In this document: positions 1-44,683 of the stretch, piece after piece | Position numbering within the stretch: position 1 is the stretch's first letter | Layout of the letters: every line of letters starts with the position of its first letter | Assembly (NCBI RefSeq): GCF_006345805.1 | Contig: NC_042998.1 | Coordinates: 199,888,001-199,952,000, forward strand | Length of the DNA stretch: 64,000 nt | Reading direction: 5' to 3' | From: Octopus sinensis | Taxonomy: Eukaryota | The notes under the pieces: generated by a model | What the model saw: only the letters and a program-made list of their open reading frames with translations | What the model was told of the DNA's origin: nothing | Database searches by the model: none | Program-made: the position numbers and the translations under genes

Positions 1-344
1 CTACTACTACTACTACTAATAATAATAATAATAATAATAATCCTGGTTTATGTCTAACTAGTAGAGGGATTCCGCAGTAAAGGAATACTCCCGGTTTAGT
101 ATAGGGATAAAATGAAGTAATCACTAAATTTCCTACAGCTTAATTTAACATTTTGGCAAAATTATAGCTTATGTTGCGTAACATGTGTTATGATGCATCA
201 AAACTATGTGAGTTGAAGAGACAGGATTATAAAAGAATTATATCCTGCAATCAACAGACACATGTGTCTAGTCCTCAGTAAAATGAACATCATTATTGCA
301 CGTATTTGCACTTCGAAGCAAAATCCATGCCTGTGCTCAAATTA

Positions 345-1530
345 TTGGGTTATCCGGAAAGTGCGTGCCGATTTATAGTAGCTTACCTTTCGACTTATTT
401 TAGAACAGGGTTGAATCCATAATATAAGATTTGACTACACCTCCATTTAGAGCACAGTTTAAGCTATCTTTTCGTGGAAGAAGGTTTATGTTCCTATGAC
501 CTATGTTAATTCTGTAACCCTTTAAAATGGAAGACAAGAAAGTTCATTTTCGGCACCTGATGCTTTTCTTTTTCCGTAAAGGGAAAAATGCCTCAGAAGC
601 AACCAAAGAAATATGCGCAGTTTACGATGATGTTTCCTTATCCGAGAGAACTGTACGGAAGTGGTTCGCAAGGTCCCAAGCTGGTGATTGTAGCCTTATT
701 CATAAAGAGCGGTCAGGCAGACCATACACTACAGATAATGACAAAATCAAGTCATTAATTGAGAATAACCCACATTGCACAACTCGAGAATTGGCAGAAA
801 GCCTCAACATATCAAAATCTGTCGTTCATGAGCACCTGGTAAAACTTGGTTACACAAATCGCCACGATGTTTGGGTACCACATGAGTTGAGTGAGAAGAA
901 CCTTCTGGATCGCATTTCCATCTATGATTCGCTTTATAAACAGAATGAAAACGCGCCTTTTTTAAAACAAATTGTTACAGGTGATGAGAAATGGATTGTC
1001 TACCGAAATACTCAGAAAAAGCGATCCTGGAGTAAGCGAAATGAGCCACCCTTAGCCACTCCAAAAGCGGGTCTTCACCCTGAAGCAGCAATTCAAGAGT
1101 TAAAAGCAGCAATTCAAGAGAAACGTCCAGAATTGGCCAGCAGGAAGAGTGTTGTTTTCCAACATGATAATTTAAGACCGCACGTATATTTGGGAACCAG
1201 ACAAAAATTGCTGCAGCTCGGCTAGGATGTGTTACTCCAACCTCCATATTCACCAGATATTGCTCATTCAGATTTCGACTTATTCAGGTCTCTGCTGAAT
1301 AGTCGTAATGGTAAACATTTCAATTCCTTGGATGACGTAAAAAGGTACCTTGATGAATTCTTTGCCATGAAACCACCTCAATTCTGGGAAGTGGGTATTT
1401 TCAAGTTAAAGGAAAGATAGAGATGCATTGTGCAAAAAAATGGTTCATATTTGGTTGATCAAAAATGGAAAGTATTTATTGACCTTTTTCTTTCCTTTAA
1501 AAGTCGGCACGATCTTTCCGGACAACCTAA
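345..1530 (+). mobile_element. Mariner (DD34D) DNA transposon, internally deleted, both TIRs present
   Basis: 5' TIR TTGGGTTATCCGGAAAGTGCGTGCCGATTT (345-374) matches the reverse complement of 1501-1530 (TTAGGTTGTCCGGAAAGATCGTGCCGACTT) with 5 mismatches. TA dinucleotides flank it at 343-344 and 1531-1532, and it encloses a transposase frame. Confidence 0.95.
527..1462 (+). pseudogene. Mariner transposase pseudogene
   Basis: One frame carries the HTH N-terminus (FRHLMLFFFRKGKNASEATKEIC, RSGRP), WVPHEL, TGDEKW, HDN and YSPDIAHSDF motifs. There are in-frame TAG stops at 1223-1225 and 1418-1420 where mariners have Trp, and the segment normally between LHP and QELKAAI is missing. Confidence 0.93.
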
Positions 1531-1625
1531 TACATTCACACATCCATCGCAAAAAGATGCAGCTTCATCTTATATAAATCCCTTCCCCAAAACCCACATG
1601 AGTCGAAATCGATGGGTGTTACATA

Positions 1626-1627
<2 letters not shown>

Positions 1628-1701
<74 letters not shown>

Positions 1702-1703
1702 CA

Positions 1704-1747
<44 letters not shown>
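1628..1747. repeat. (ATT)n microsatellite
   Basis: Near-pure ATT run. Similar tracts lie at about 2304-2452, 2833-2970, 3345-3404, 3803-3961, 5013-5330, 6464-6610 and 9138-9232. Confidence 0.98.
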
Positions 1748-2301
1748 GAGTGAGAGAGCAGTTCATGCCATCAAAGTGACACTGGGGTAAAATATACGAA
1801 GCCCAATATACCCATCATGACTACCCGTCTGATAAAGGTACACCAGGCACATGCATCACAACCATATGTGCGCAACATGGTGATCTCATATCAAGATAAA
1901 CAGCACATGACCTTGCAGGTGGGGCCCAGTTAGAATTTTCTTCAGGTTGAGTAGCCCATCCCGCTCAAACGGTCCCTGAATAAGGGTTGCTTAAGGATGT
2001 TGAAAGAACCACCCATGTTTCCAGAGGTGAACTATTCAAACCCCAAAGAATCCCTCTCAACACATGGCTATGATGCTCCCCCACTACTTCTGCTCGTGAT
2101 CAGAGATGCACATATCGTCAGCCACTAAGGGACATGCTCAACTGGTTAAGGTCAAACAACTGACAAGCAAATCTGTGGTATTGAGCAGAATATTTGCTGT
2201 AGCCCATCTTTTATACCAAGACAAAACAATGTACATGATAACACTTCCAATCAGTTAAGATCAGAAGCCATGAGAGCCACTGCCTGGTACTGCATCAGGG
2301 C

Positions 2302-2303
<2 letters not shown>
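1748..2303 (-). mobile_element. ~556-nt AAT-tract-associated non-coding repeat, full-length copy 1
   Basis: High identity to 6611-7206, 3405-3802, 11570-12122 (opposite strand) and 44221-44571 (opposite strand). In sense orientation it starts ATGCCCTGATGCAG and ends CTCTCTCACTC-(AAT)n. Orientation is inferred from the truncation pattern. Confidence 0.9.
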
Positions 2304-2354
<51 letters not shown>

Positions 2355-2454
2355 TTATTATCATCATCATCATCATCATTATTATTATTATTATTATTAT
2401 TGTTGTTGTTGTTGTTGTTGTTATTCTTATTCTTATTATCATTATTATTATTGT

Positions 2455-2660
2455 TCTGCGAGCAGGCAAAATCGTTAATGCGCAGAGCAAAATGTTTAGC
2501 AATATTTCGTCTTTACGTTCTGAGTTCAAATTCCACACTGGTCGACTTTACATTTCATCCTTTCGGGGTCGATAAATTAAATACCAGTGAAACACTGGGG
2601 TCGAAGTAATTGACTGATTCCCTCTCACCAAATTTGAGGCCTTGTGCCTTCAATAGAAAG
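2455..2660 (+). mobile_element. tRNA-derived SINE (diverged)
   Basis: B-box-like GTTCTGAGTTCAAATTCC followed by CATCCTTTCGGGGTCGATAAATTAAATACCAGT, the same family as 5748, 21649 and 48334. Confidence 0.85.
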
Positions 2661-2671
2661 TATTATTAATA

Positions 2672-2831
2672 TTCCTTCGTTACACAGTGCAGGTAAAAAT
2701 GCACCGGAGACTTTAGTCATCTGTTAAGTTTAATGGACCTCATACAGATAATGCTTTCCTTACGATGTGCGATGTGCCCAATAATGCTGCTTTTTGCCAG
2801 TCATCAATCTTGCATGGGATTTCCAGTTGCC

Positions 2832-2832
<1 letters not shown>
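2672..2832 (-). mobile_element. Short 3' fragment of an R4/Dong-type LINE
   Basis: Minus strand reads QLEIPCKIDDWQKAALLGTSHIVRKALSV*, the C-terminal LLGT-HILR-LS motif seen in the longer copies, then a short 3' UTR running into TAA repeats. Confidence 0.7.
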
Positions 2833-2889
<57 letters not shown>

Positions 2890-2891
2890 CA

Positions 2892-2961
<70 letters not shown>

Positions 2962-2984
2962 CATTATTTTTTATTTATTTATTT

Positions 2985-3336
2985 TTGATATGCATGTTTA
3001 TTTCAGTCACTTGTCGAGATACACCCATCGTCTTTGGGTGAGTGAAGGCTAAGAGATGTTACGTTATGATTGAAAGCTTGTCGAGAGGTAGTAGCTAAAT
3101 ATCTTCATGCAATACAACACAAACATTTAAATGGATAGGGTTTTTCAAAGGATGTGGTCAGTACTAGTCAGTACAATCTTTTGGATTCCTCTGAGACATG
3201 GTTCTCTTTTTTGACACCCCTTTTTTCATCATAACTAGGGTACCTACAATAACAGAAATAGTTCTCGCTTTAGCATGCTACATCTTTTGTATTTCAAGTT
3301 GAAGGTCCAATTTACTCAGTTTGCCAAATTGCGTCT
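2985..3336 (-). mobile_element. Degenerate 3' fragment of an R4/Dong-type LINE (same subfamily as 11080-11502)
   Basis: Decayed KLSK..LEIQKM..ISVIVGTL peptide on the minus strand. GAAATACAAAAGATG and the 3' UTR motif CAAGTGA are shared with the plus-strand copy at 11.1-11.5 kb. Confidence 0.65.
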
Positions 3337-3346
3337 ATTTTATTAC

Positions 3347-3404
<58 letters not shown>

Positions 3405-3802
3405 GAATGAGAGAGCAGTGCATGGCATCAAAGTGGCACTGGGGTAAATTACACATCATGACTACCCGTCTGATAAGGGTACACCAGGCACATGCATCAC
3501 AGCCATATGTGCACGACATGGTGATATCATATCGAGATAAACAGCGCATGAACTTGCAGGTGGGGCCCAGGTTGAATTTTCTTCTGTCTAGTAGCCCATC
3601 CTGCTCAAAAGGTCCCTGAATAAGTGTTGTTTAAGGATGTTGAACGAACCACCCATCTTTCCAAATGTAAATTATCCAAACCTCTAAGTATTCCCTTCAA
3701 CACACGGCTATAATGTTCCCCCACTACTTCTGCTAGTGGTCAGAGATGCACATAGCATCAGCCATTATGGGACATGGTCAACTGGTTAAGGTCAAACAAC
3801 TG
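3405..3802 (-). mobile_element. AAT-associated repeat, 5'-truncated copy 2
   Basis: Same 3' terminus (GAATGAGAGAGCAG on +) as copy 1 with small internal deletions. It stops at GGTCAAACAACTG and enters ATT repeats. Confidence 0.88.
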
Positions 3803-3842
<40 letters not shown>

Positions 3843-3874
3843 TATTATTATTATTATTATTATCATTATTATTA

Positions 3875-3922
<48 letters not shown>

Positions 3923-3961
3923 ATTAGTATTATTATTATTATTATTGTTATTATTATTATT

Positions 3962-5012
3962 CAGTAGTTTTATTTTTATAGCGTGCTTTCACTTCACTAC
4001 CGAGCGCAGCTCTGTGTGCCTTGGGTATGTGCTGTGATTTGTTGTGATGCTCTGATGGTTATTGTATGGAAAGTGTTCTGCGTAGGATGTGTGCAGTGCC
4101 TAGTAGTGCAATTTTCTGTATGTTATATGTGTTTGTAAGTCCTGGTGTTTTTGTTATGTATTTGTCTGAATATTTTTTATCATGCCTAATGCACCTACTA
4201 TGATAGGAATTGTTTCTGTTTTCAGATTCCACATTCTAGTTACCTCTATTTCCAGGTCTTTGTATTTTGAGAGTTTCTCCATTTCTTTTAGAGACACGTT
4301 GTCATCAGCCGGTATTGATACATCAATTAGAAAGCATTTTTTTTCTTCATGATCTCTGACAACTATATCTGGTCTGATGGCCTTAATTTCTCTATCTGTG
4401 TGTATCGGCATATCCCAGAGTATGGTTGCTTTCTCGTTTCCTGTGACCTTTTCTGGTGTGTGCCTATATCATCTTTTTTCTGTTGTTATTCCATAATGTT
4501 GGCATAGCTTCCAGTGTATGTAGGTTCCAACTCTGTCATGTCTGTGAATATATTCCTTCTTAGCCAGGACTGGGCAGCTAGAGATAATATGATTTATTGT
4601 TTCTTGTCCATCTCCACATATTCTGCAGTTACTTGTTATATTTCTTTTCATTACATGTTTTTGGTAATTTCTGGTGGGGAGGCTTTGGTCTTGTGCTGCA
4701 ATTAAAAATCCCTCTGTCTCTGCTTTGAGTCCTGAGCTTCTCAACCATTGCTGGGATTTTTCTTTGTCTATTTATTTTGCGTTTAGTTTAGTCCAGTATT
4801 TACCATGAAGGGGCTTTTCTTGCCATCGTTTTATCATGGTTCGCTGCTGTTCTATTTTTAGTTTGAATTTCATTTGTTTTATAGCTTTTGTTGTTTCTTC
4901 ATCTTCTTCTTCATGTTTATTAGGTGGTATGGTTTCTTGTTTGTATTTGTCAGCTTCCTTAAATACTGAGAACAGTTTTTTGTTTTGCTCGTGTTTTGCT
5001 GCTATCTGGATC
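3962..5012 (-). mobile_element. R4/Dong-clade non-LTR retrotransposon, 5'-truncated (zinc knuckle + restriction-like endonuclease + 3' UTR)
   Basis: ORFs 4469-4744 and 4154-4411 give CRICGDGQETINHIISSC (CCHC), RHD, RPDIVVRD, LIDVSIP, EKLSKYKDL and PIIVGALG. The 3' UTR ends ACTACTG-(AAT)n. Confidence 0.9.
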
Positions 5013-5062
5013 AGTTTTCCTTCCTTGTTATTATTATTTTTATTACTATTATTATTATATTA

Positions 5063-5133
<71 letters not shown>

Positions 5134-5334
5134 TTAATATTAATATTATCATTATTATCATCATCATCATCATCATCATCATTATTATTATTATTTTCAT
5201 TATTATTATTATTATATTATTATTATTATTATTATTATTATCATTATTTTAATTATTATTAATATTATTATTATTATTATTATTGCTGTTGTTGTTGCTT
5301 TTGTTTTTGTAGTTGTTATTATTTTTTGGAGTCT

Positions 5335-6460
5335 GGGCGCTGACGACAAACAAACTGGCTTGTCTGTTGTAGAGGACCTTCTAGTCAGAAACTATCATGG
5401 CTAATTTCTAGATGTACTTTGCCTGGCAGTGCTACAGGAGGTCGCTACCAGTTCCCTCTACAGCTAGGGATGTGCTGTGAGACAGACTTGCCCAAGGTGC
5501 AGAAAGAGTGAAGATACTGTTCCGCACGCTCTCGTTCAGAGTCCGGGCATTGCTAACGTGTTGGATTATGTCGAACAGATGTTGCTACGTGTGGGACGGA
5601 TCCGTCTATCGGCCGGGTCTGTAGTGATGATTGCCTCGTCTCCCTCCTCAAACAGGCAGTCAAGGCAATGTTCCTTTGCCTGGTAGTGTTAGCGAAATAG
5701 GTTGGTGGACAAGGCTGAAAAGCATGAGGGGAGATACATTCCTCTTTGAAGGTGGCGAACTGCCAGAAATGGTAGTACGCTGAGTGAAATGATTAGCGGT
5801 ATTTTGTCTGCCGCTACGTTCTGAGTTGAAATTCCGCCGAGGTCCACTTTGCCTTTCAGCCTTTCAGGGACGATTAAATAAATACCAGTTACTCACTGGG
5901 ATCGATATAATCGACTTAATCCGTTTGGCTGTCCTTGTTTGTCTCCTCTATGTTTAGCCCCTTGAGGGCAATAAAGAAATAAGATACATTCCTCTTTAGC
6001 AGAGCTCTCATTCACTTCTTAAAGTTTCACTTAAAAACTAACTTGACGGTGGAGAGGGATGTGCTCTCCTCGAGTGAGTTAGTTGAAAGGTGGGCGAAAT
6101 TTGCCTAAATGGTATGACTGGGTGGTACCTAATTAAGCGTAGACATGTGGGTCGGAGAGAATTACTTGAAGTGGGCACTTACTCTAGGTGTTCAAGGAAC
6201 TCCCGGACAAAGGGCTTGCTAATTATCCCTAGAGGTCATCCTGTATCAGAAGGGTTACATCTCTATCATCCACCCACTTTTTTCCTGTAAACCTTTCTAT
6301 TCTGTGCATATGTCCCTTCCCTTTCATTGTATGCCGTTTTTACGTTCATTTTGCTTTCTCTTATTTAATTATTTTATCATTTCATTATATATAAAGCGCA
6401 ACACTTTATAGCTATCTTCCAACTATTCTTCTCCTCCTTTGACCTGGGGACAAATAAATG
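5335..6460 (+). mobile_element. Tx1/L1-like LINE C-terminal fragment, interrupted by a SINE
   Basis: TCPRCRKSEDTVPHALVQSPG resembles the L1/Tx1 C-terminal CCHC region, followed by LIHFLKFHLK..ERW-like helices and a T-rich 3' UTR. The clade call is from motif memory. Confidence 0.6.
5748..5981 (+). mobile_element. Full-length tRNA-derived SINE with 16-bp TSD
   Basis: AGATACATTCCTCTTT at 5732-5747 and 5982-5997 flanks a tRNA-like head with GTTCTGAGTTGAAATTCC and an A-rich tail. Confidence 0.92.
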
Positions 6461-6481
6461 AAATTATTATTATTATTATTA

Positions 6482-6537
<56 letters not shown>

Positions 6538-6565
6538 TATTATTATTATTACTACTACTATTATT

Positions 6566-6610
<45 letters not shown>

Positions 6611-7206
6611 GAGTGAGAGAGCAGTTCATGCCATCAAAGTGACACTGGGGTAAAATATACGAAGCCCAATATACCCATCATGACTACCCGTCTGATAAGG
6701 GTACACCAGGCACATGCATCACAACCATATGTGCGTGACATGGTGATCTTATATCAAGATAAACAGCACATGACCTTGCAGGTGGAGCCCAGTTAGAATT
6801 TTCTTCAGGTTGAGTAGCCCATCCTGCTCAAACGGTCCCTGAATAAGGGTTGTTTAAGGATGTTGAAAAAACCACCCGTGTTTCCAGAGGTGAATTATTC
6901 AAACCCCAAAGAATCCCTCTCGACACATGGCTATGATGCTCCCCCACTACTTCTGCTCGTGATCAGAGATGCACATATCGTCAGCCACTAAGGGACATGC
7001 TCAACTGGTTATGGTTAAACAGCTGACAAGCAAATCTGTGGTACTGAGCAGAATATTTGCTGTAGCCCATCTTTTATACCAAGACAAAATAATGTACATG
7101 ATAACACTTCCAATCAGTTAAGATCAGAAGCCATGAGAGCCACTGCCTGGTACTGCATCAGGGCATTCTGGTACTGCATCAGGGCATCCTGGTACTGCAT
7201 CAGGGC
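6611..7206 (-). mobile_element. AAT-associated repeat, full-length copy 3 with triplicated 5'-terminal 21-mer
   Basis: Near-identical to copy 1. CTGGTACTGCATCAGGGCAT(T/C) is repeated at 7147, 7168 and 7189. Confidence 0.9.
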
Positions 7207-7249
7207 TATTATTATTATTATTATTATTATTATATTATTATTATTATTA

Positions 7250-7281
<32 letters not shown>

Positions 7282-7288
7282 GGTATTA

Positions 7289-7340
<52 letters not shown>

Positions 7341-7373
7341 GTTATATTATTATTATTATTATTATTATTATTG

Positions 7374-7411
<38 letters not shown>

Positions 7412-7589
7412 CTACTACTACTACTATTATTATTATTATTATTATTATTACTATACTATTATTATTATTATTACTATTACTATTATTATTATTATATTAT
7501 TATTATTATTATCTTATTATATTATTATTATTATTATTATATATTATTATTATTGTTATTATATTATTATTATATTATTATTGGTATTA

Positions 7590-7641
<52 letters not shown>

Positions 7642-7669
7642 GTTATTATTATTATTATTATTATTATTG

Positions 7670-7702
<33 letters not shown>

Positions 7703-7773
7703 TATTACTACTACTACTACTATTATTATTATTATTATTATTATTACTATTACTTATTATTATTATTATATAC

Positions 7774-7855
<82 letters not shown>
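7207..7855. repeat. ~650-bp compound (ATT)n/(ACT)n microsatellite
   Basis: Interrupted ATT run with ACT, GTT and GGT variants; it is the source of ORFs 7133, 7339 and 7371. Confidence 0.98.
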
Positions 7856-7858
<3 letters not shown>

Positions 7859-9137
7859 TAGTTTTATTTTTTATAGCGTGCTTTCACTTCACTACCGAGC
7901 GCAGCTCTGTGTGCCTTAGGTATGTGCTGTGATTTGTTGTGATGCTCTGATGGTAATTGTATGGAAAGTGTTCTGCGTCGGATGTGTGCAGTGCCTAGTA
8001 GTGCAATTTTCTGTATGTTATATGTGCTTGTAAGTCCTGGTGTTTTTGTTATGTATTTGTCTGAATATTTTTTTATCATGCCTAATGCACCTACTATGAT
8101 AGGAATTGTTTCAGTTTTTAGATTCCACATTCTGGTTACTTCTATTTCCAGGTCTTTGTATTTTGAGAATTTCTCCATTTCTTTTAGAGATACGTTATCA
8201 TCTGCCGGTATTGATACATTAATTAGAAAGCATTTCATGATCTCTGACAACTATATCTGGTCCGTTGTCCTTAATTTTTCTATCTGTGTGTATCGGCATA
8301 TCCCAGAGTATGGTTGCTTTCTCGTTTTCTGTGACCTTTTCTGGTGTGTGCCTATACCATCTTTTTTCTGTTGTTATTCCATAATGTTGGCATAGCTTCC
8401 AATGTATGTAGGATCCAACTCTGTCATGTCTGTGAATATATTCCTTCTTAGCCGGGACTGGGCAGCTAGAGATAATATGATTTATTGTTTCTTGTCCATC
8501 TCCACATATTCTGCAGTTACTTGTTATATTTCTTTTCATTATGTTTTTGGTAATTTCTGGTGGGGAGGCTTTGGTCTTGTGCTGCAATTAAAAATCCCTC
8601 TGTCTCTGCTTTGAGTACTGGGCTTCTCAACCATTGCTGGGATTTTTCTTTGTCTATTTCTTTTGCGTTCAGTTTAGTCCAGTGTTTACCATGAAGGGGC
8701 TTTTCTTGCCATCGTTTTATCATGGTTAATTGCTGTTCTATTTTTGTTTAGATTTCATTTGTTTTATAGCTTTTGTTATTTCTTCATCTTCTTCTTCTTG
8801 TTTTTCATATTTATTAGGTGGTATATGATTCTTGTTTGTATTTGTCAGCTTCCTTAAATACTGAGAACAGTTTTTTGTTTGCTCGTGTTTTGCCGCTATT
8901 TGTATCAGTTTTCCTTTCTTCTGAAGTAGATATTTTGCAGTCCTATGGTGGTTATTTTATAGTAGTTTTCCAGTTGTATAAGGCCTTTCTACCACCTTCT
9001 ATACGTTGTATATATAGTCTTTCTATGTCAGATTTTGGGTGATGCATCCTAGATCCTGTCATTATTTTTCTTGTGTTCCTATCTATTTTGGTCAGTTCAT
9101 TTAGTGTCCAGTTAAGGATTTTGTAGCTGTAACTACA
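7856..9137 (-). mobile_element. R4/Dong-clade LINE, 5'-truncated, same subfamily as 3962-5012
   Basis: Same 3' end (CAGTAGTTTTATTTTTATAGCG on +), CCHC knuckle, LIDVSIP-like and EKFSKYKDL motifs. It extends further 5' into the RT thumb (MHHPKSDIERLY). Confidence 0.9.
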
Positions 9138-9232
<95 letters not shown>

Positions 9233-9235
<3 letters not shown>

Positions 9236-10520
9236 CACTGAACAGATTAGACTTTGGAAATGATAAGAATCCTAACATCGGGTTACAAGTTGCCTCAAAT
9301 ACCAAGAACCCTCCTATTGGGTTACAAGTAATCACGGATGCCAAAACGCTCTTAAGTATCCTAGCTGTCCCTAATAACACTGTTCTCAGGAGCTGTACTA
9401 AACTGGGTTTTATGCCTACTTCCTCTATCCATCTGTTAAGAGCTTTAGAAATAGTTCCCAATATAGCTATAACTACTGGGATACATTGTACCCGCACTTT
9501 CCATAGTCTCTGTAATCCAATAGCCAGGTCCTCATACTTTGCTATTTTTTCTATACCTCTGATATTAATTTCTCATCATTTGCAACTGTACACTCAATTA
9601 TCTGACACTTTCGAATCTCCTCTCTAATACTACCAAACCAGGCCTTCTAGCTTCTATCGCTCTGTCTGTCAGAATGTAAATGTCCCACAACATGTAGTAT
9701 TTCTTACTTTCTAGTATTTTACTAAGTTCATGTACATACGATTTATCAACATTACAAATCCTAGCTTTCTACATTGCTCCCAGTGGATTATTCCTCTAGA
9801 TTGTCATGTCTTTTCTTGTATTCTTTCAATGCAAGCATGCTACATTCACTTACTATATGAACAACGCTTTCTTCTTTGCATTGCATAAGCTACATTGGGA
9901 ATCTACTTTGTTTTTGTCTATCTTGGCTTTTATCCAATTAGTCCTTAATGTTTGATCTTGTGCTGCTACTAACACAGTTTTTCTCCCTCTTCAGCTTTCC
10001 TTTCTGCAAACATCACCATGACTCACAACTACTATTTGTTGTAAATATCTTTGGGAATCTACCATGCAACGCTTTCTCTTACCAGATAATTTCTGTTCTT
10101 TTTTCTGATTTTTAACTTCGTTTGGTTTTTTTGGTTTCCCTATATCTTGCAGATTTTATTAAATTTTCTTCATTATTACCTACATATCAGTTTATATCTA
10201 CTCTAGCTAACTCTACATAGTCTTCTACTGATGTCAACCCTCATCCGCCTTCATTTATAGGTAGGTTTAATATTGCTACTCCTGCAGTTGGGCGGAGTCA
10301 TCCACTTATATTGAATTCCTCCCCATTTCTTTTGTCTAGCTTTACAAATTCAGTTTTTGTCCAATCTAATAATGCTGCCGAGTAGTTTTACGCGTCAGTA
10401 GTTTTATTATTATTCTATGGTTCCACCACTGTTCAACCGATTGCGTGATACCGCTTGGATACTTGAAGAATTTCTATTTTGTATTGTATAGGAAGTACTC
10501 TAGGTATTGTTAGTGCAGAG
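9233..10520 (-). mobile_element. R4/Dong-clade LINE of a second, older subfamily
   Basis: KYEDLA..LQRLWKVRVQCIPVVIAILGT..LLGTARILKSVL on the minus strand, with a decayed CSLC..ESVVHIVSEC knuckle and AAQDQ motif upstream. The 3' end adjoins the TAA tract. Confidence 0.82.

Positions 10521-11502: not shown

Positions 11503-11569
<67 letters not shown>
11503..11569. repeat. (AAT)n microsatellite (opposite strand polarity to the upstream ATT tracts)
   Basis: Direct reading. Confidence 0.98.
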
Positions 11570-11570
<1 letters not shown>

Positions 11571-44097: not shown

Positions 44098-44149
<52 letters not shown>

Positions 44150-44184
44150 AGCTACTACCACCACCACCACCACCACTACTACTA

Positions 44185-44220
<36 letters not shown>
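44098..44220. repeat. (CTA)n/(CCA)n microsatellite
   Basis: Direct reading. Confidence 0.96.
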
Positions 44221-44571
44221 CACGAGCAGAAGTAATGGGGGAGCATCATAAACATGTGTCGAGAGGGATTCTTTGGGGTTTGAATAATGCACCTCTGGAA
44301 ACATGGGTTTTTCGTTCAACATCCTTTGACAACCCTTATTCAAGGACCTTTTAAGTGGAATGGGTTACTTGACCAGAAGAAAATTCTAACTGGGCCCCAC
44401 CTGCAAGGTCATGTGCTGTTTATCTTGATATGAGATCACCATGTCGCGCACATATGGTTGTGATGCATGTGCCTGGTGTACCTTTATCAGACAGGTAGTC
44501 ATGATGGGTATATTGGGCTTCGTATATTTTATCCGAGTGTCACTTCGATGTCATGCACTGCTCTCTCACTC
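44221..44571 (+). mobile_element. AAT-associated repeat, 5'-truncated copy 5
   Basis: Begins about 205 nt into the unit (CACGAGCAGAAG) and ends CTCTCTCACTC followed by (AAT)n then (GAT)n. Confidence 0.88.
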
Positions 44572-44575
44572 AATG

Positions 44576-44624
<49 letters not shown>

Positions 44625-44632
44625 TGATGATA

Positions 44633-44683
<51 letters not shown>

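What the first reader, a model, noticed from the sequence alone, without database searches (positions are those of the whole stretch)
1748..2303. Orphan ~556-nt non-coding retroposon that sits in (AAT)n tracts
Five copies (1748, 3405, 6611, 11570, 44221) share one terminus, CT(C/G)CTC(ACTC/ATTC)-(AAT)n. Three share the other terminus (ATGCCC) and two are truncated from that side, which is the pattern of target-primed reverse transcription of a defined-length RNA. I see no ORF, TIRs, convincing tRNA B box, or 3' sequence shared with the neighbouring Dong LINEs. It nevertheless takes the same orientation as those LINEs relative to the microsatellite strand. A short 3' stem-loop (GTGTCA-CTTTGA-TGGCAT) could be the recognition signal. 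Inference: a microsatellite-targeted non-autonomous partner of R4/Dong LINEs whose promoter or 5'-processing mechanism is unknown. I cannot tell whether it is already catalogued.
Basis: partly seen in the sequence, partly recalled or inferred. Interest (0 to 1): 0.75.

Follow-up and report, generated by a model that had tools for sequence, protein, structure and literature searches.

The report
Non-coding retroposon targeting AAT microsatellites
A 556-base non-coding jumping element, present in at least 12,000 copies in this octopus-type genome, inserts in one orientation into (AAT)n microsatellites and probably borrows the enzyme of a neighbouring Dong-like LINE, which makes it a modest new variant of a familiar kind of genomic parasite.

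Summary
All five window copies exist. Three are full length (556 nt, 5' ATGCCC...CACTC 3') and two are cut short at the 5' end. All are followed by (AAT)n.

- **Copy number:** the exact 3' 25-mer occurs 11,990 times in the genome and the exact 5' 25-mer 5,674 times. Reversed-pattern controls give 0.
- **Truncation:** in a sample of 40 copies not chosen by structure, 19 start at nt 1 and 20 are cut at nt 47-448. I found no sign of 3' truncation.
- **Target:** 17 of 21 copies lacking nt 1 still have (AAT)n directly upstream, so the microsatellite is the target and not only a tail.
- **Content:** the element has no ORF, tRNA, Rfam family or internal repeat. It shares no sequence with the roughly 4.1-kb R2-like LINE that lies in the same tracts in the same orientation.

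The most likely mechanism is trans-mobilisation by that young Dong-like LINE, with the (AAU)n tail pairing to the nicked repeat. This link is inferred, not shown. The proposed 3' stem-loop is not supported. How the 5' end is made remains open: an HDV-like ribozyme, which Bombyx Dong has, was not detected.

The scan had already noted this family at least eight times on other DNA of this genome. Verdict: a real new variant of a known kind, of moderate interest.

The parts
1748..2303 (-). Full-length 556-nt copy of the young 'A' subfamily. This is the copy in the finding.
   Evidence: More than 40 genomic copies are 99-100% identical to it over nt 1-556.
1624..1747 (-). (AAT)n on the element's sense strand, forming the 3' tail and downstream target of copy 1748-2303
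   Evidence: TRF; flanks
2304..2452 (-). (AAT)n upstream (5') flank of copy 1748-2303, taken to be target microsatellite
3405..3803 (-). 5'-truncated copy (sense nt 141-556, 84.9%), older 'C' subfamily, with (AAT)n on both sides (3336-3404 and 3803-3961)
6611..7166 (-). Full-length copy (97.1%) with (AAT)n on both sides (6463-6610 and 7207-7855)
7167..7206 (-). Two extra partial copies of the first ~21 nt of the element, placed directly upstream of copy 6611-7166 (a head duplication)
   Evidence: TRF reports 7146-7206, period 21, 2.9 copies; sequence
11570..12123 (+). Full-length older copy (86.6%, sense nt 1-553). It has (AAT)n upstream (11503-11570) and only ATAATAATA downstream.
44221..44571 (+). 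5'-truncated copy (sense nt 206-556, 92%). It has (CTA)n upstream and (AAT)n then (GAT)n downstream (44572-44682).
3962..5027 (-). 5'-truncated copy of LINE A, the candidate mobiliser. It is 97.4% identical to the last 1.07 kb of the ORF-bearing copy in L043 and has (AAT)n on both sides.
7856..9137 (-). 5'-truncated copy of LINE A carrying the CCHC motif and the restriction-like endonuclease region. Its 3' end is ...AAAACTACTG followed by (AAT)n.
9235..10400 (-). Fragment of LINE C, a second and old RLE-type LINE family (25-30% aa identity to LINE A). It also ends in (TAA)n and has the same orientation.
   Evidence: The best genomic copies are only 80-85% identical.

Best explanation
The element is a non-autonomous, non-coding retroposon of 556 nt plus an (AAU)n tail, copied into (AAT)n microsatellites by target-primed reverse transcription.

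**Shown:**
- The unit has a fixed length and is dispersed on all large scaffolds.
- Its orientation relative to the AAT strand is invariant.
- The 3' end is intact, and about half the copies are truncated at the 5' end only.
- (AAT)n lies upstream even of truncated copies, and these tracts usually sit in ordinary unique DNA.
- The element has no coding capacity.
- About one head in six carries a partial duplication of the 5' end.

**Inferred:**
- The enzyme comes in trans from the young, very abundant R2-like LINE A. This Dong-like LINE has RT, a CCHC motif and a restriction-like endonuclease, is about 4.1 kb long, and occupies the same tracts in the same polarity.
- The element and this LINE share nothing but the repeat tail. 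Recognition is therefore most likely through the (AAU)n tail, which pairs with the nicked (ATT)n strand and primes cDNA synthesis. This would resemble the way L1 accepts poly(A) RNAs.
- The constant 5' junction register (TAA|ATGCCC) and the head duplications suggest microhomology-guided joining and template jumping or re-priming at the RNA 5' end.
- Pol III is unlikely to make the RNA, because TTTT runs lie at nt 78 and 512 and there is no A/B-box head. A Pol II internal promoter, or read-through transcription followed by processing, is more likely.
For: - **Copies and termini:**
- **Genome counts:** searches give 11,990 3' ends and 5,674 heads, with controls at 0.
- **Sample not chosen by structure** (first 40 exact 3' hits on scaffold C1): 19 copies start at nt 1 and 20 are truncated at nt 47-448. 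All 40 have the AAT tail. 17 of 21 copies lacking nt 1 have (AAT)n upstream.
- **What precedes the upstream tract**: unique or other DNA in 37 of 40, and a LINE A 3' end in only 3.
- **No 3' truncation**: 25 of 44 heads have an exact 3' 25-mer about 531 nt downstream. About 0.53 is expected from roughly 2.5% divergence alone.
- **Junction registers**: TAATAA|ATGCCC in 29 of 51 heads, and CACTC|AATAATAAT in 67 of 77 tails.
- **Head duplications:**
- **LINE A:** about 48,900 first-look candidates; constant 3' end plus (AAT)n in 17 loci; open frames up to 862 aa; Pfam RVT_1 4e-32; aligns to solved R2 proteins from RT through RLE at 2e-36; truncated copies sit in the same compound AAT tract and orientation as three element copies.
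- **No shared sequence:** (local alignment no better than shuffles).
- **Chimeric copy L049:** a LINE RT N-terminal part is joined to element nt ~355-556 plus (AAT)n.
- **No Pol III-type head:** ARAGORN finds 0 genes and Rfam gives no real match; TTTT runs are reported.
- **Literature:** Dong inserts in (TAA)n (PMC3774820). Dong-R4 LINEs are abundant and recently active in octopus (PMC13282606; PMC9115989).
Against: - There is no direct evidence that LINE A protein copies this RNA.
- The two share no 3' sequence or detectable common structure, unlike stringent LINE/SINE pairs and R2 SIDEs.
- Only two RLE-LINE families were examined, while O. vulgaris is reported to have five recently active Dong-R4 families. 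An unexamined family could be the true partner and could even share the element's 3' end.
- The single chimera could be a genomic deletion between adjacent insertions rather than a template switch.
- The R4/Dong clade placement of LINE A was not tested by phylogeny.
- The species identity (octopus) rests on earlier scan notes and on genome size. I did not verify it.
Confidence: 0.65

Rival explanations
1. The element is mobilised by a different (TAA)n-specific LINE family that I did not sample. That family may share the element's 3' region, which would make this an ordinary stringent LINE/SINE pair or an internally deleted derivative.
For: O. vulgaris is reported to have 5 recently active Dong-R4 families plus Hero and R2, and only LINE A and LINE C were examined here. 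The old chimera L049 joins a LINE part only 80-87% identical to the sampled LINE A copies.
Against: LINE A is by far the most conspicuous neighbour, with about 48,900 candidates. The L049-type LINE copies have the same 3' end as LINE A. No copy among about 100 aligned continues 5' into LINE sequence collinearly. LINE C is too old, with best copies at 80-85%.
Confidence: 0.15
2. The RNA is cut out of read-through transcripts by a self-cleaving ribozyme at its own 5' end, as in Bombyx Dong, R4 and R2 and their SIDEs. It would not start at an internal promoter. This concerns only how the 5' end is made and is compatible with the main explanation.
For: B. mori Dong carries an HDV-like ribozyme that cuts exactly at the (TAA)n/5' junction, and R2 SIDEs keep only the ribozyme plus the 3' UTR (PMC3774820). 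The element has a very sharp 5' end immediately after (TAA)n, with no upstream promoter sequence possible. The first ~150 nt are slightly the best conserved part in old copies (0.92-0.95 against 0.81-0.88 mid-element).
Against: No Rfam ribozyme family matches, even at E up to 10. [quoted passage not shown] A relaxed descriptor gives as many hits in shuffles as in the real sequence. The descriptor was not validated on a positive control, so this result is inconclusive rather than negative.
Confidence: 0.15
3. It is merely the 3' UTR of a LINE, seen as heavily 5'-truncated LINE copies.
For: The element has an (AAT)n tail and 5' truncation like the LINEs beside it. One copy (L049) has LINE coding sequence upstream.
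Against: There are 5,674 exact heads, and about half of sampled copies stop at exactly the same nucleotide with (AAT)n upstream. There is no similarity to any part of the ~4.1-kb LINE A. In L049 the LINE part is the RT N-terminus joined at element nt ~355, not a collinear 3' end.
Confidence: 0.02
4. It is an ordinary, untargeted SINE-like element with an (AAT)n tail, for example riding on RTE or CR1 LINEs with microsatellite tails. The upstream AAT would be coincidental or would be the tail of earlier insertions.
For: The octopus RTE is reported to end in a microsatellite (PMC9115989). A few truncated copies have non-AAT DNA upstream (L089/L094, L090, L048).
Against: 17 of 21 copies lacking nt 1 and nearly all full-length copies have (AAT)n directly upstream, against a background of 0.4-2.4%. 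What precedes that tract is unique or other DNA in 37 of 40 cases. No Pol III head is present.
Confidence: 0.03

Closest known systems
Dong (Bombyx mori) and R4-clade, (TAA)n-specific non-LTR retrotransposons
   Same: Both insert into (TAA)n/(AAT)n microsatellites in one orientation, carry a simple-repeat tail and show 5' truncation typical of TPRT. The neighbouring LINE A has the single-ORF RT + CCHC + restriction-like endonuclease layout and aligns to R2 proteins.
   Different: The 556-nt element encodes nothing and shares no sequence with the LINE. The HDV-like 5' ribozyme shown for Bombyx Dong (PMC3774820) was not detected in it.
SIDEs (short internally deleted elements) of R2 and R1 in Drosophila
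   Same: Both are non-autonomous passengers of a site-specific RLE LINE, insert at the same target as the LINE, and are non-coding.
   Different: SIDEs consist of the parent's 5' ribozyme plus its 3' UTR (PMC3774820). This element has neither the 5' end nor the 3' end of LINE A, so it is not an internal-deletion derivative of that LINE.
Alu/SVA-type 'relaxed' trans-mobilisation by L1 through the poly(A) tail
   Same: The only feature shared by passenger and LINE is the homopolymer or simple-repeat 3' tail. Both reach high copy number, show 5' truncation, and have non-coding RNA.
   Different: Here the tail is (AAU)n and the target is the matching microsatellite. The enzyme is an RLE-type LINE, not an APE-type one. 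There is no 7SL or tRNA head and the transcript is probably not made by Pol III. Tail-only recognition is my inference and has not been demonstrated.
Classical tRNA-derived octopus SINEs and other Pol III SINEs
   Same: They are short, non-coding, abundant retroposons that depend on LINE enzymes.
   Different: This element has no tRNA, 5S, 7SL or snRNA head. It has two internal TTTT runs and its insertion is targeted to a microsatellite.

Membership tests
Non-autonomous non-LTR retroposon (TPRT product) | Defined 3' end with a repeat tail, and truncation from the 5' side only | tested here: met
   The 40-copy sample has 19 full-length copies and 20 truncated at nt 47-448, all with the tail. 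Head/tail pairing is consistent with no 3' truncation.
Non-autonomous non-LTR retroposon (TPRT product) | No coding capacity of its own | tested here: met
   The longest stop-free stretch is 59 aa on either strand, with 5-13 stops per frame.
(TAA)n-targeting retroelement (Dong-like target specificity) | The microsatellite is present on both sides of the insertion, including upstream of 5'-truncated copies, and the orientation is fixed | tested here: met
   17 of 21 copies lacking nt 1 have AAT upstream, P about 1e-20. Orientation is invariant in all of the roughly 100 copies examined.
(TAA)n-targeting retroelement (Dong-like target specificity) | Mobilised by a Dong/R4 LINE protein | not testable with these tools
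   The evidence is only circumstantial: same tracts, same polarity, a young abundant LINE A, and one chimera.
SIDE-type internally deleted derivative of the partner LINE | 5' end (ribozyme) and 3' UTR identical to the parent LINE | tested here: not met
   There is no local similarity to the composite ~4.1-kb LINE A above shuffles. The 5' ends differ, and so do the 3' ends.
Classical SINE (Pol III head) | A tRNA-, 5S-, 7SL- or snRNA-derived 5' head with an internal Pol III promoter | tested here: not met
   ARAGORN finds 0 genes. Rfam at E up to 10 gives only spurious AAU-repeat hits. TTTT runs lie at nt 78 and 512.
Stringent LINE/SINE pair | 3' tail region of the SINE derived from the partner LINE's 3' end | tested here: not met
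   for LINE A. The LINE C 3' end is also unrelated. Other LINE families were not examined.
HDV-like ribozyme-processed retroelement 5' end | Nested double-pseudoknot (P1, P1.1, P2, P3, catalytic C) starting at the 5' junction | tested here: inconclusive
   The strict descriptor gives 0 hits. The relaxed descriptor gives 49 hits against 38 in shuffles. No Rfam ribozyme matches. The descriptor was not validated on a known ribozyme.
R4/Dong clade (for the neighbouring LINE A) | RT followed by a CCHC motif and a restriction-like endonuclease, and a (TAA)n target | tested here: met
   Sequence motifs, Pfam RVT_1, alignment to R2 proteins across RT-RLE, and (AAT)n at the 3' end in 17 loci.
R4/Dong clade (for the neighbouring LINE A) | Phylogenetic placement inside the R4 clade rather than R2, NeSL, Hero or CRE | not tested

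The most novel reading that the evidence does not exclude
The element may be the first case of 'relaxed', tail-only trans-mobilisation by a site-specific RLE-type (R2-superfamily) LINE. Under this reading, any RNA ending in (UAA)n could be written into (AAT)n microsatellites by the Dong-like enzyme. The element's sharply defined 5' end would be made by an as-yet unrecognised promoter or self-processing motif in its well-conserved first ~150 nt.
Probability: 0.3. Interest if true: 0.6.

Novelty: new variant of a known kind. Interest (0 to 1): 0.4.

Why it matters
Passengers of site-specific, R2-like LINEs are rarely described. The known ones, the R2 SIDEs, are cut-down copies of their LINE. A very successful passenger that shares only the microsatellite tail with its presumed driver would show that a Dong-type enzyme can accept foreign RNAs by tail pairing alone. 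That is relevant to how these LINEs choose templates. It is also relevant to current efforts to use R2-family enzymes for targeted DNA insertion.

The family also matters for practical reasons. It has at least 12,000 copies, perhaps a few tens of thousands by my extrapolation, with many 99-100% identical. It expands and interrupts (AAT)n loci, so it will complicate microsatellite markers and repeat annotation in octopus genomes, where it probably sits among the 'unclassified SINE' or 'unknown' families.

Tried and rejected
- **LINE 3' UTR reading:** rejected. Heads are sharp and abundant, and there is no similarity to the LINE.
- **Shared short piece with the LINE** (an earlier scan note): not reproduced. 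The best local alignments score no better than shuffles.
it is absent from the MFE fold and the z-scores are weak. By eye, diverged copies often break it. Covariation among dead genomic copies is not a valid test in any case.
[quoted passage not shown] Inconclusive.
- **Rfam and ARAGORN:** nothing real.
- **Internal repeats or ORFs in the element:** none.
- **LINE C as current partner:** rejected as too old.
- **3' transduction from an upstream LINE:** rejected. Only 3 of 40 upstream tracts are preceded by a LINE A 3' end.
- **Technical dead ends:**
  - 100-nt DNA queries to the own genome returned nothing, because very common words are skipped.
  - Exact termini are not printed in any paper of the library.
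  - Dfam and Repbase are not available here.

Full report
**Observation**

| Window position | Identity | Strand / extent (sense nt) |
|---|---|---|
| 1748-2303 | query | minus, full length |
| 6611-7166 | 97.1% | minus, full length |
| 11570-12123 | 86.6% | plus, nt 1-553 |
| 44221-44571 | 92% | plus, nt 206-556 |
| 3405-3803 | 84.9% | minus, nt 141-556 |

Read in sense orientation, the unit is 556 nt and runs from 5' ATGCCCTGATGCAGTACC to CTGCTCTCTCACTC 3', followed by (AAT)n. The three full-length copies are also preceded by (AAT)n. Copy 6611 carries two extra partial copies of its first ~21 nt directly upstream (TRF 7146-7206).

**Abundance and age**

The window lies on scaffold C2 of a 2.72-Gb assembly. 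A whole-genome search returned more than 40 copies that are 99-100% identical over nt 1-556, spread over many scaffolds.

Exact-pattern counts are as follows.

| Pattern | Count | Reversed control |
|---|---|---|
| 3' 25-mer | 5,068 | 0 |
| 3' 25-mer with the A/C subfamily position (nt 541) degenerate | 11,990 | 0 |
| 5' 25-mer | 5,674 | 0 |

Copies in a sample not chosen by structure are 91.9-99.3% identical to the window copy. Older copies at 77-89% also exist, some of them full length. The family is therefore old and was active recently. Because a 25-mer survives intact in only about half of copies at 2-3% divergence, the true copy number is probably a few tens of thousands. That last figure is my extrapolation.

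**Truncation and target**

I fetched the first 40 exact 3' hits on scaffold C1, in genomic order.

- 19 begin at nt 1, one at nt 6, and 20 at nt 47-448.
- All 40 have the (AAT)n tail.
- 17 of the 21 copies lacking nt 1 have (AAT)n directly upstream. The exceptions are L089 and L094 (one duplicated locus), L090, and L092, which has the inverted repeat.

Perfect (AAT)>=5 tracts cover 2.4% of this window and 0.4% of its 13-64 kb part, so this enrichment has P about 1e-20. Upstream of the AAT tract there is unique or other DNA in 37 of 40 cases and a LINE 3' end in only 3. The targets are therefore ordinary microsatellites, not mainly the tails of earlier insertions, and the element is not routinely carried along behind a LINE.

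I paired the listed coordinates of heads and tails. 25 of 44 exact heads have an exact 3' 25-mer about 531 nt downstream, which is what roughly 2.5% divergence alone predicts for complete copies. Only 23 of 100 tails have an exact head.

The junctions are strikingly regular: TAATAA|ATGCCC in 29 of 51 heads and CACTC|AATAATAAT in 67 of 77 tails.

**Head duplications**

About 9 of roughly 50 heads are preceded by a partial copy of the element's own 5' end. The structure is [1..k][1..556], with k = 3, 17-21, 68, 85 or 104, sometimes with 1-3 nt (A, TAA) in between. Coordinates also show runs of heads 27-164 nt apart, for example five on C1 at 68,851,373-68,851,807.

I read these as template jumps or re-priming at the RNA 5' end during integration. 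R2-type reverse transcriptases are known for this behaviour; that is established knowledge and was not tested here.

**What the element is not**

- It has no ORF longer than 59 aa and no internal repeats. Its GC content is 45%.
- ARAGORN finds no tRNA.
- Rfam finds nothing except spurious matches to the AAU repeat, even at E up to 10.
- Two TTTT runs, at nt 78 and 512, argue against a 556-nt Pol III transcript.
- Folding gives no exceptional stability at either end (z -0.3 to -1.5).

**The neighbouring LINEs**

Window 7856-9137 and 3962-5027 (minus strand) are 5'-truncated copies of one LINE, which I call LINE A. Its properties are:

- **Abundance:** about 48,900 first-look candidates in the genome.
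- **3' end:** a constant ...AAAACTACTG followed by (AAT)n in 17 loci.
- **Coding:** open frames up to 862 aa, Pfam RVT_1 at 4e-32, and an alignment to solved R2 proteins from the RT through the endonuclease at 2e-36. CCHC and RHD...PD...D...K motifs are visible.
- **Length:** walking upstream, two copies start at the same point right after a repeat tract, with GG(T/G)GGACGTTTAACA..., giving a full length of about 4.1 kb.

This agrees with the roughly 4.2 kb per insertion implied for recently active Dong-R4 LINEs of O. vulgaris (PMC13282606).

A second family, LINE C (window 9235-10400), has 25-30% aa identity to LINE A and also ends in (TAA)n. Its best copies are only 80-85% identical, so it is long dead.

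All retro-insertions in the compound tract 1624-9234 share one orientation: three element copies and two LINE A copies, plus LINE C adjacent at 9235-10400.

**Relation between the element and LINE A**

Blastn and Smith-Waterman comparison of the element with the composite LINE find nothing above shuffled controls. The composite covers the 5' 1.1 kb, the middle and the 3' end. The 5' ends and the 3' ends are plainly different. The element is therefore neither a LINE 3' UTR nor a SIDE-like internal-deletion derivative of this LINE, and it is not a stringent-type SINE partner.

One old copy, L049, is a chimera. It reads (AAT)n, then ~570 nt of the LINE's RT N-terminal coding region, then element nt ~355-556, then (AAT)4. 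This fits a template switch between element RNA and LINE RNA. A deletion between adjacent insertions would explain it equally well, so it is weak support.

**Mechanism**

The best-supported account has three steps. An RNA of 556 nt plus an (AAU)n tail is used in trans by the Dong-like LINE A protein. That protein nicks the (ATT)n strand of the microsatellite. The tail then pairs with the nicked repeat and primes reverse transcription.

About half the cDNAs stop early. At the 5' end, joining to the upstream (TAA)n occurs in a preferred register, and jumps sometimes duplicate the head.

The anatomy, target, polarity and truncation pattern are shown. The identity of the enzyme, tail-only recognition and the polymerase are inferred.

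**How the 5' end is made**

This remains open. Bombyx Dong and R4 carry an HDV-like ribozyme that cuts exactly at the (TAA)n/5' junction, and R2 SIDEs retain such a ribozyme (PMC3774820). That made a 5' ribozyme an attractive idea for this element.

A strict descriptor found none in the element or in the LINE A 5' end, a relaxed one was no better than shuffles, and Rfam ribozyme models are silent. My descriptor had no positive control, so the result is inconclusive. The first ~150 nt are slightly better conserved in old copies than the middle of the element, which is a weak hint of function there.

**Comparison with what is known**

- **Literature:** Dong-R4 LINEs are known to be abundant and recently active in octopus. 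I found no paper in the searchable library that describes a non-coding passenger in (AAT)n or prints its termini.
- **Databases:** Dfam and Repbase could not be queried. The family may well be present, unnamed, in octopus repeat libraries, which list 893 "unclassified SINE" families.
- **Earlier scan notes:** this scan's notes show the same family reported at least eight times on other DNA of this genome, with the same general reading. I tested the main claims independently. I could not reproduce one note's claim that the element borrowed a short piece of the LINE.
- **Species:** the assignment to an octopus comes from those notes and from the genome size. I did not verify it.

**Limits**

No RNA or read-level evidence could be obtained. 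Only two LINE families were examined. LINE A was not placed phylogenetically.

**Verdict**

This is a real and well-defined new variant of a known kind: a non-autonomous retroposon riding on a target-specific LINE. It is of moderate interest.

Noticed in passing
window 527-1225 (+): A 232-aa ORF with a Mos1/mariner-type transposase HTH domain (Pfam HTH_48, 1e-18), probably a mariner-like DNA transposon remnant just upstream of the compound AAT tract. A weaker HTH_48 fragment lies at 53027-53401.
   Followed up: partly
window 9235-10400 (-): A second RLE-type LINE family (LINE C, 25-30% aa identity to LINE A) that also ends in (TAA)n. Its genomic copies are only 80-85% identical, so this is an extinct (TAA)n-specific lineage next to the active one.
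   Followed up: partly
window 2969-3335 (-): A ~360-nt repeat with defined ends (query nt 6-361 in most hits). It has about 2,200 first-look candidates, and the copies scored are 74-86% identical. In the window it lies between two (AAT)n tracts in the same orientation as the element. It may be an older AAT-associated passenger family or an unrelated SINE.
   Followed up: partly
window 2453-2831 and 5285-6462: Two further non-LINE A segments enclosed by (AAT)n tracts in the compound locus. The first contains a stretch that looks like a tRNA-SINE B box (GAGTTCAAATTCC) on the plus strand. Neither was identified.
   Followed up: no
G000:C1:68851373-68851831, and pairs such as C1:819774/819801 and C1:47526328/47526357: Runs of exact 5' 25-mers of the element spaced 27-164 nt apart, that is, arrays of element heads without bodies.
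   Followed up: no
L049:4488-5335 (G000:C9460): A chimeric old insertion: (AAT)n, then ~570 nt of LINE RT N-terminal coding sequence, then element nt ~355-556, then (AAT)4. Both copies of a similar CTG(G)AAGAAAA motif are retained at the joint.
   Followed up: yes
L048:4835-5400 (G000:C2:86833335-86833900): A 77%-identical, 5'-truncated old copy (nt 329-556) with non-AAT DNA upstream. It lies just downstream of an exon-like stretch encoding a cadherin-type motif (...DENDNHPVF...), so it probably sits in an intron of a cadherin or protocadherin gene.
   Followed up: no
window 44098-44220: The truncated copy at 44221 is preceded by a (CTA)n/(TAC)n tract rather than (AAT)n. Similar (TAC)n or (TAG)n tracts adjoin the AAT tracts in L022 and L052.
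   Followed up: no
window 21651-22016: A 184-nt unit repeated twice in tandem (88% match, TRF), unrelated to the finding.
   Followed up: no
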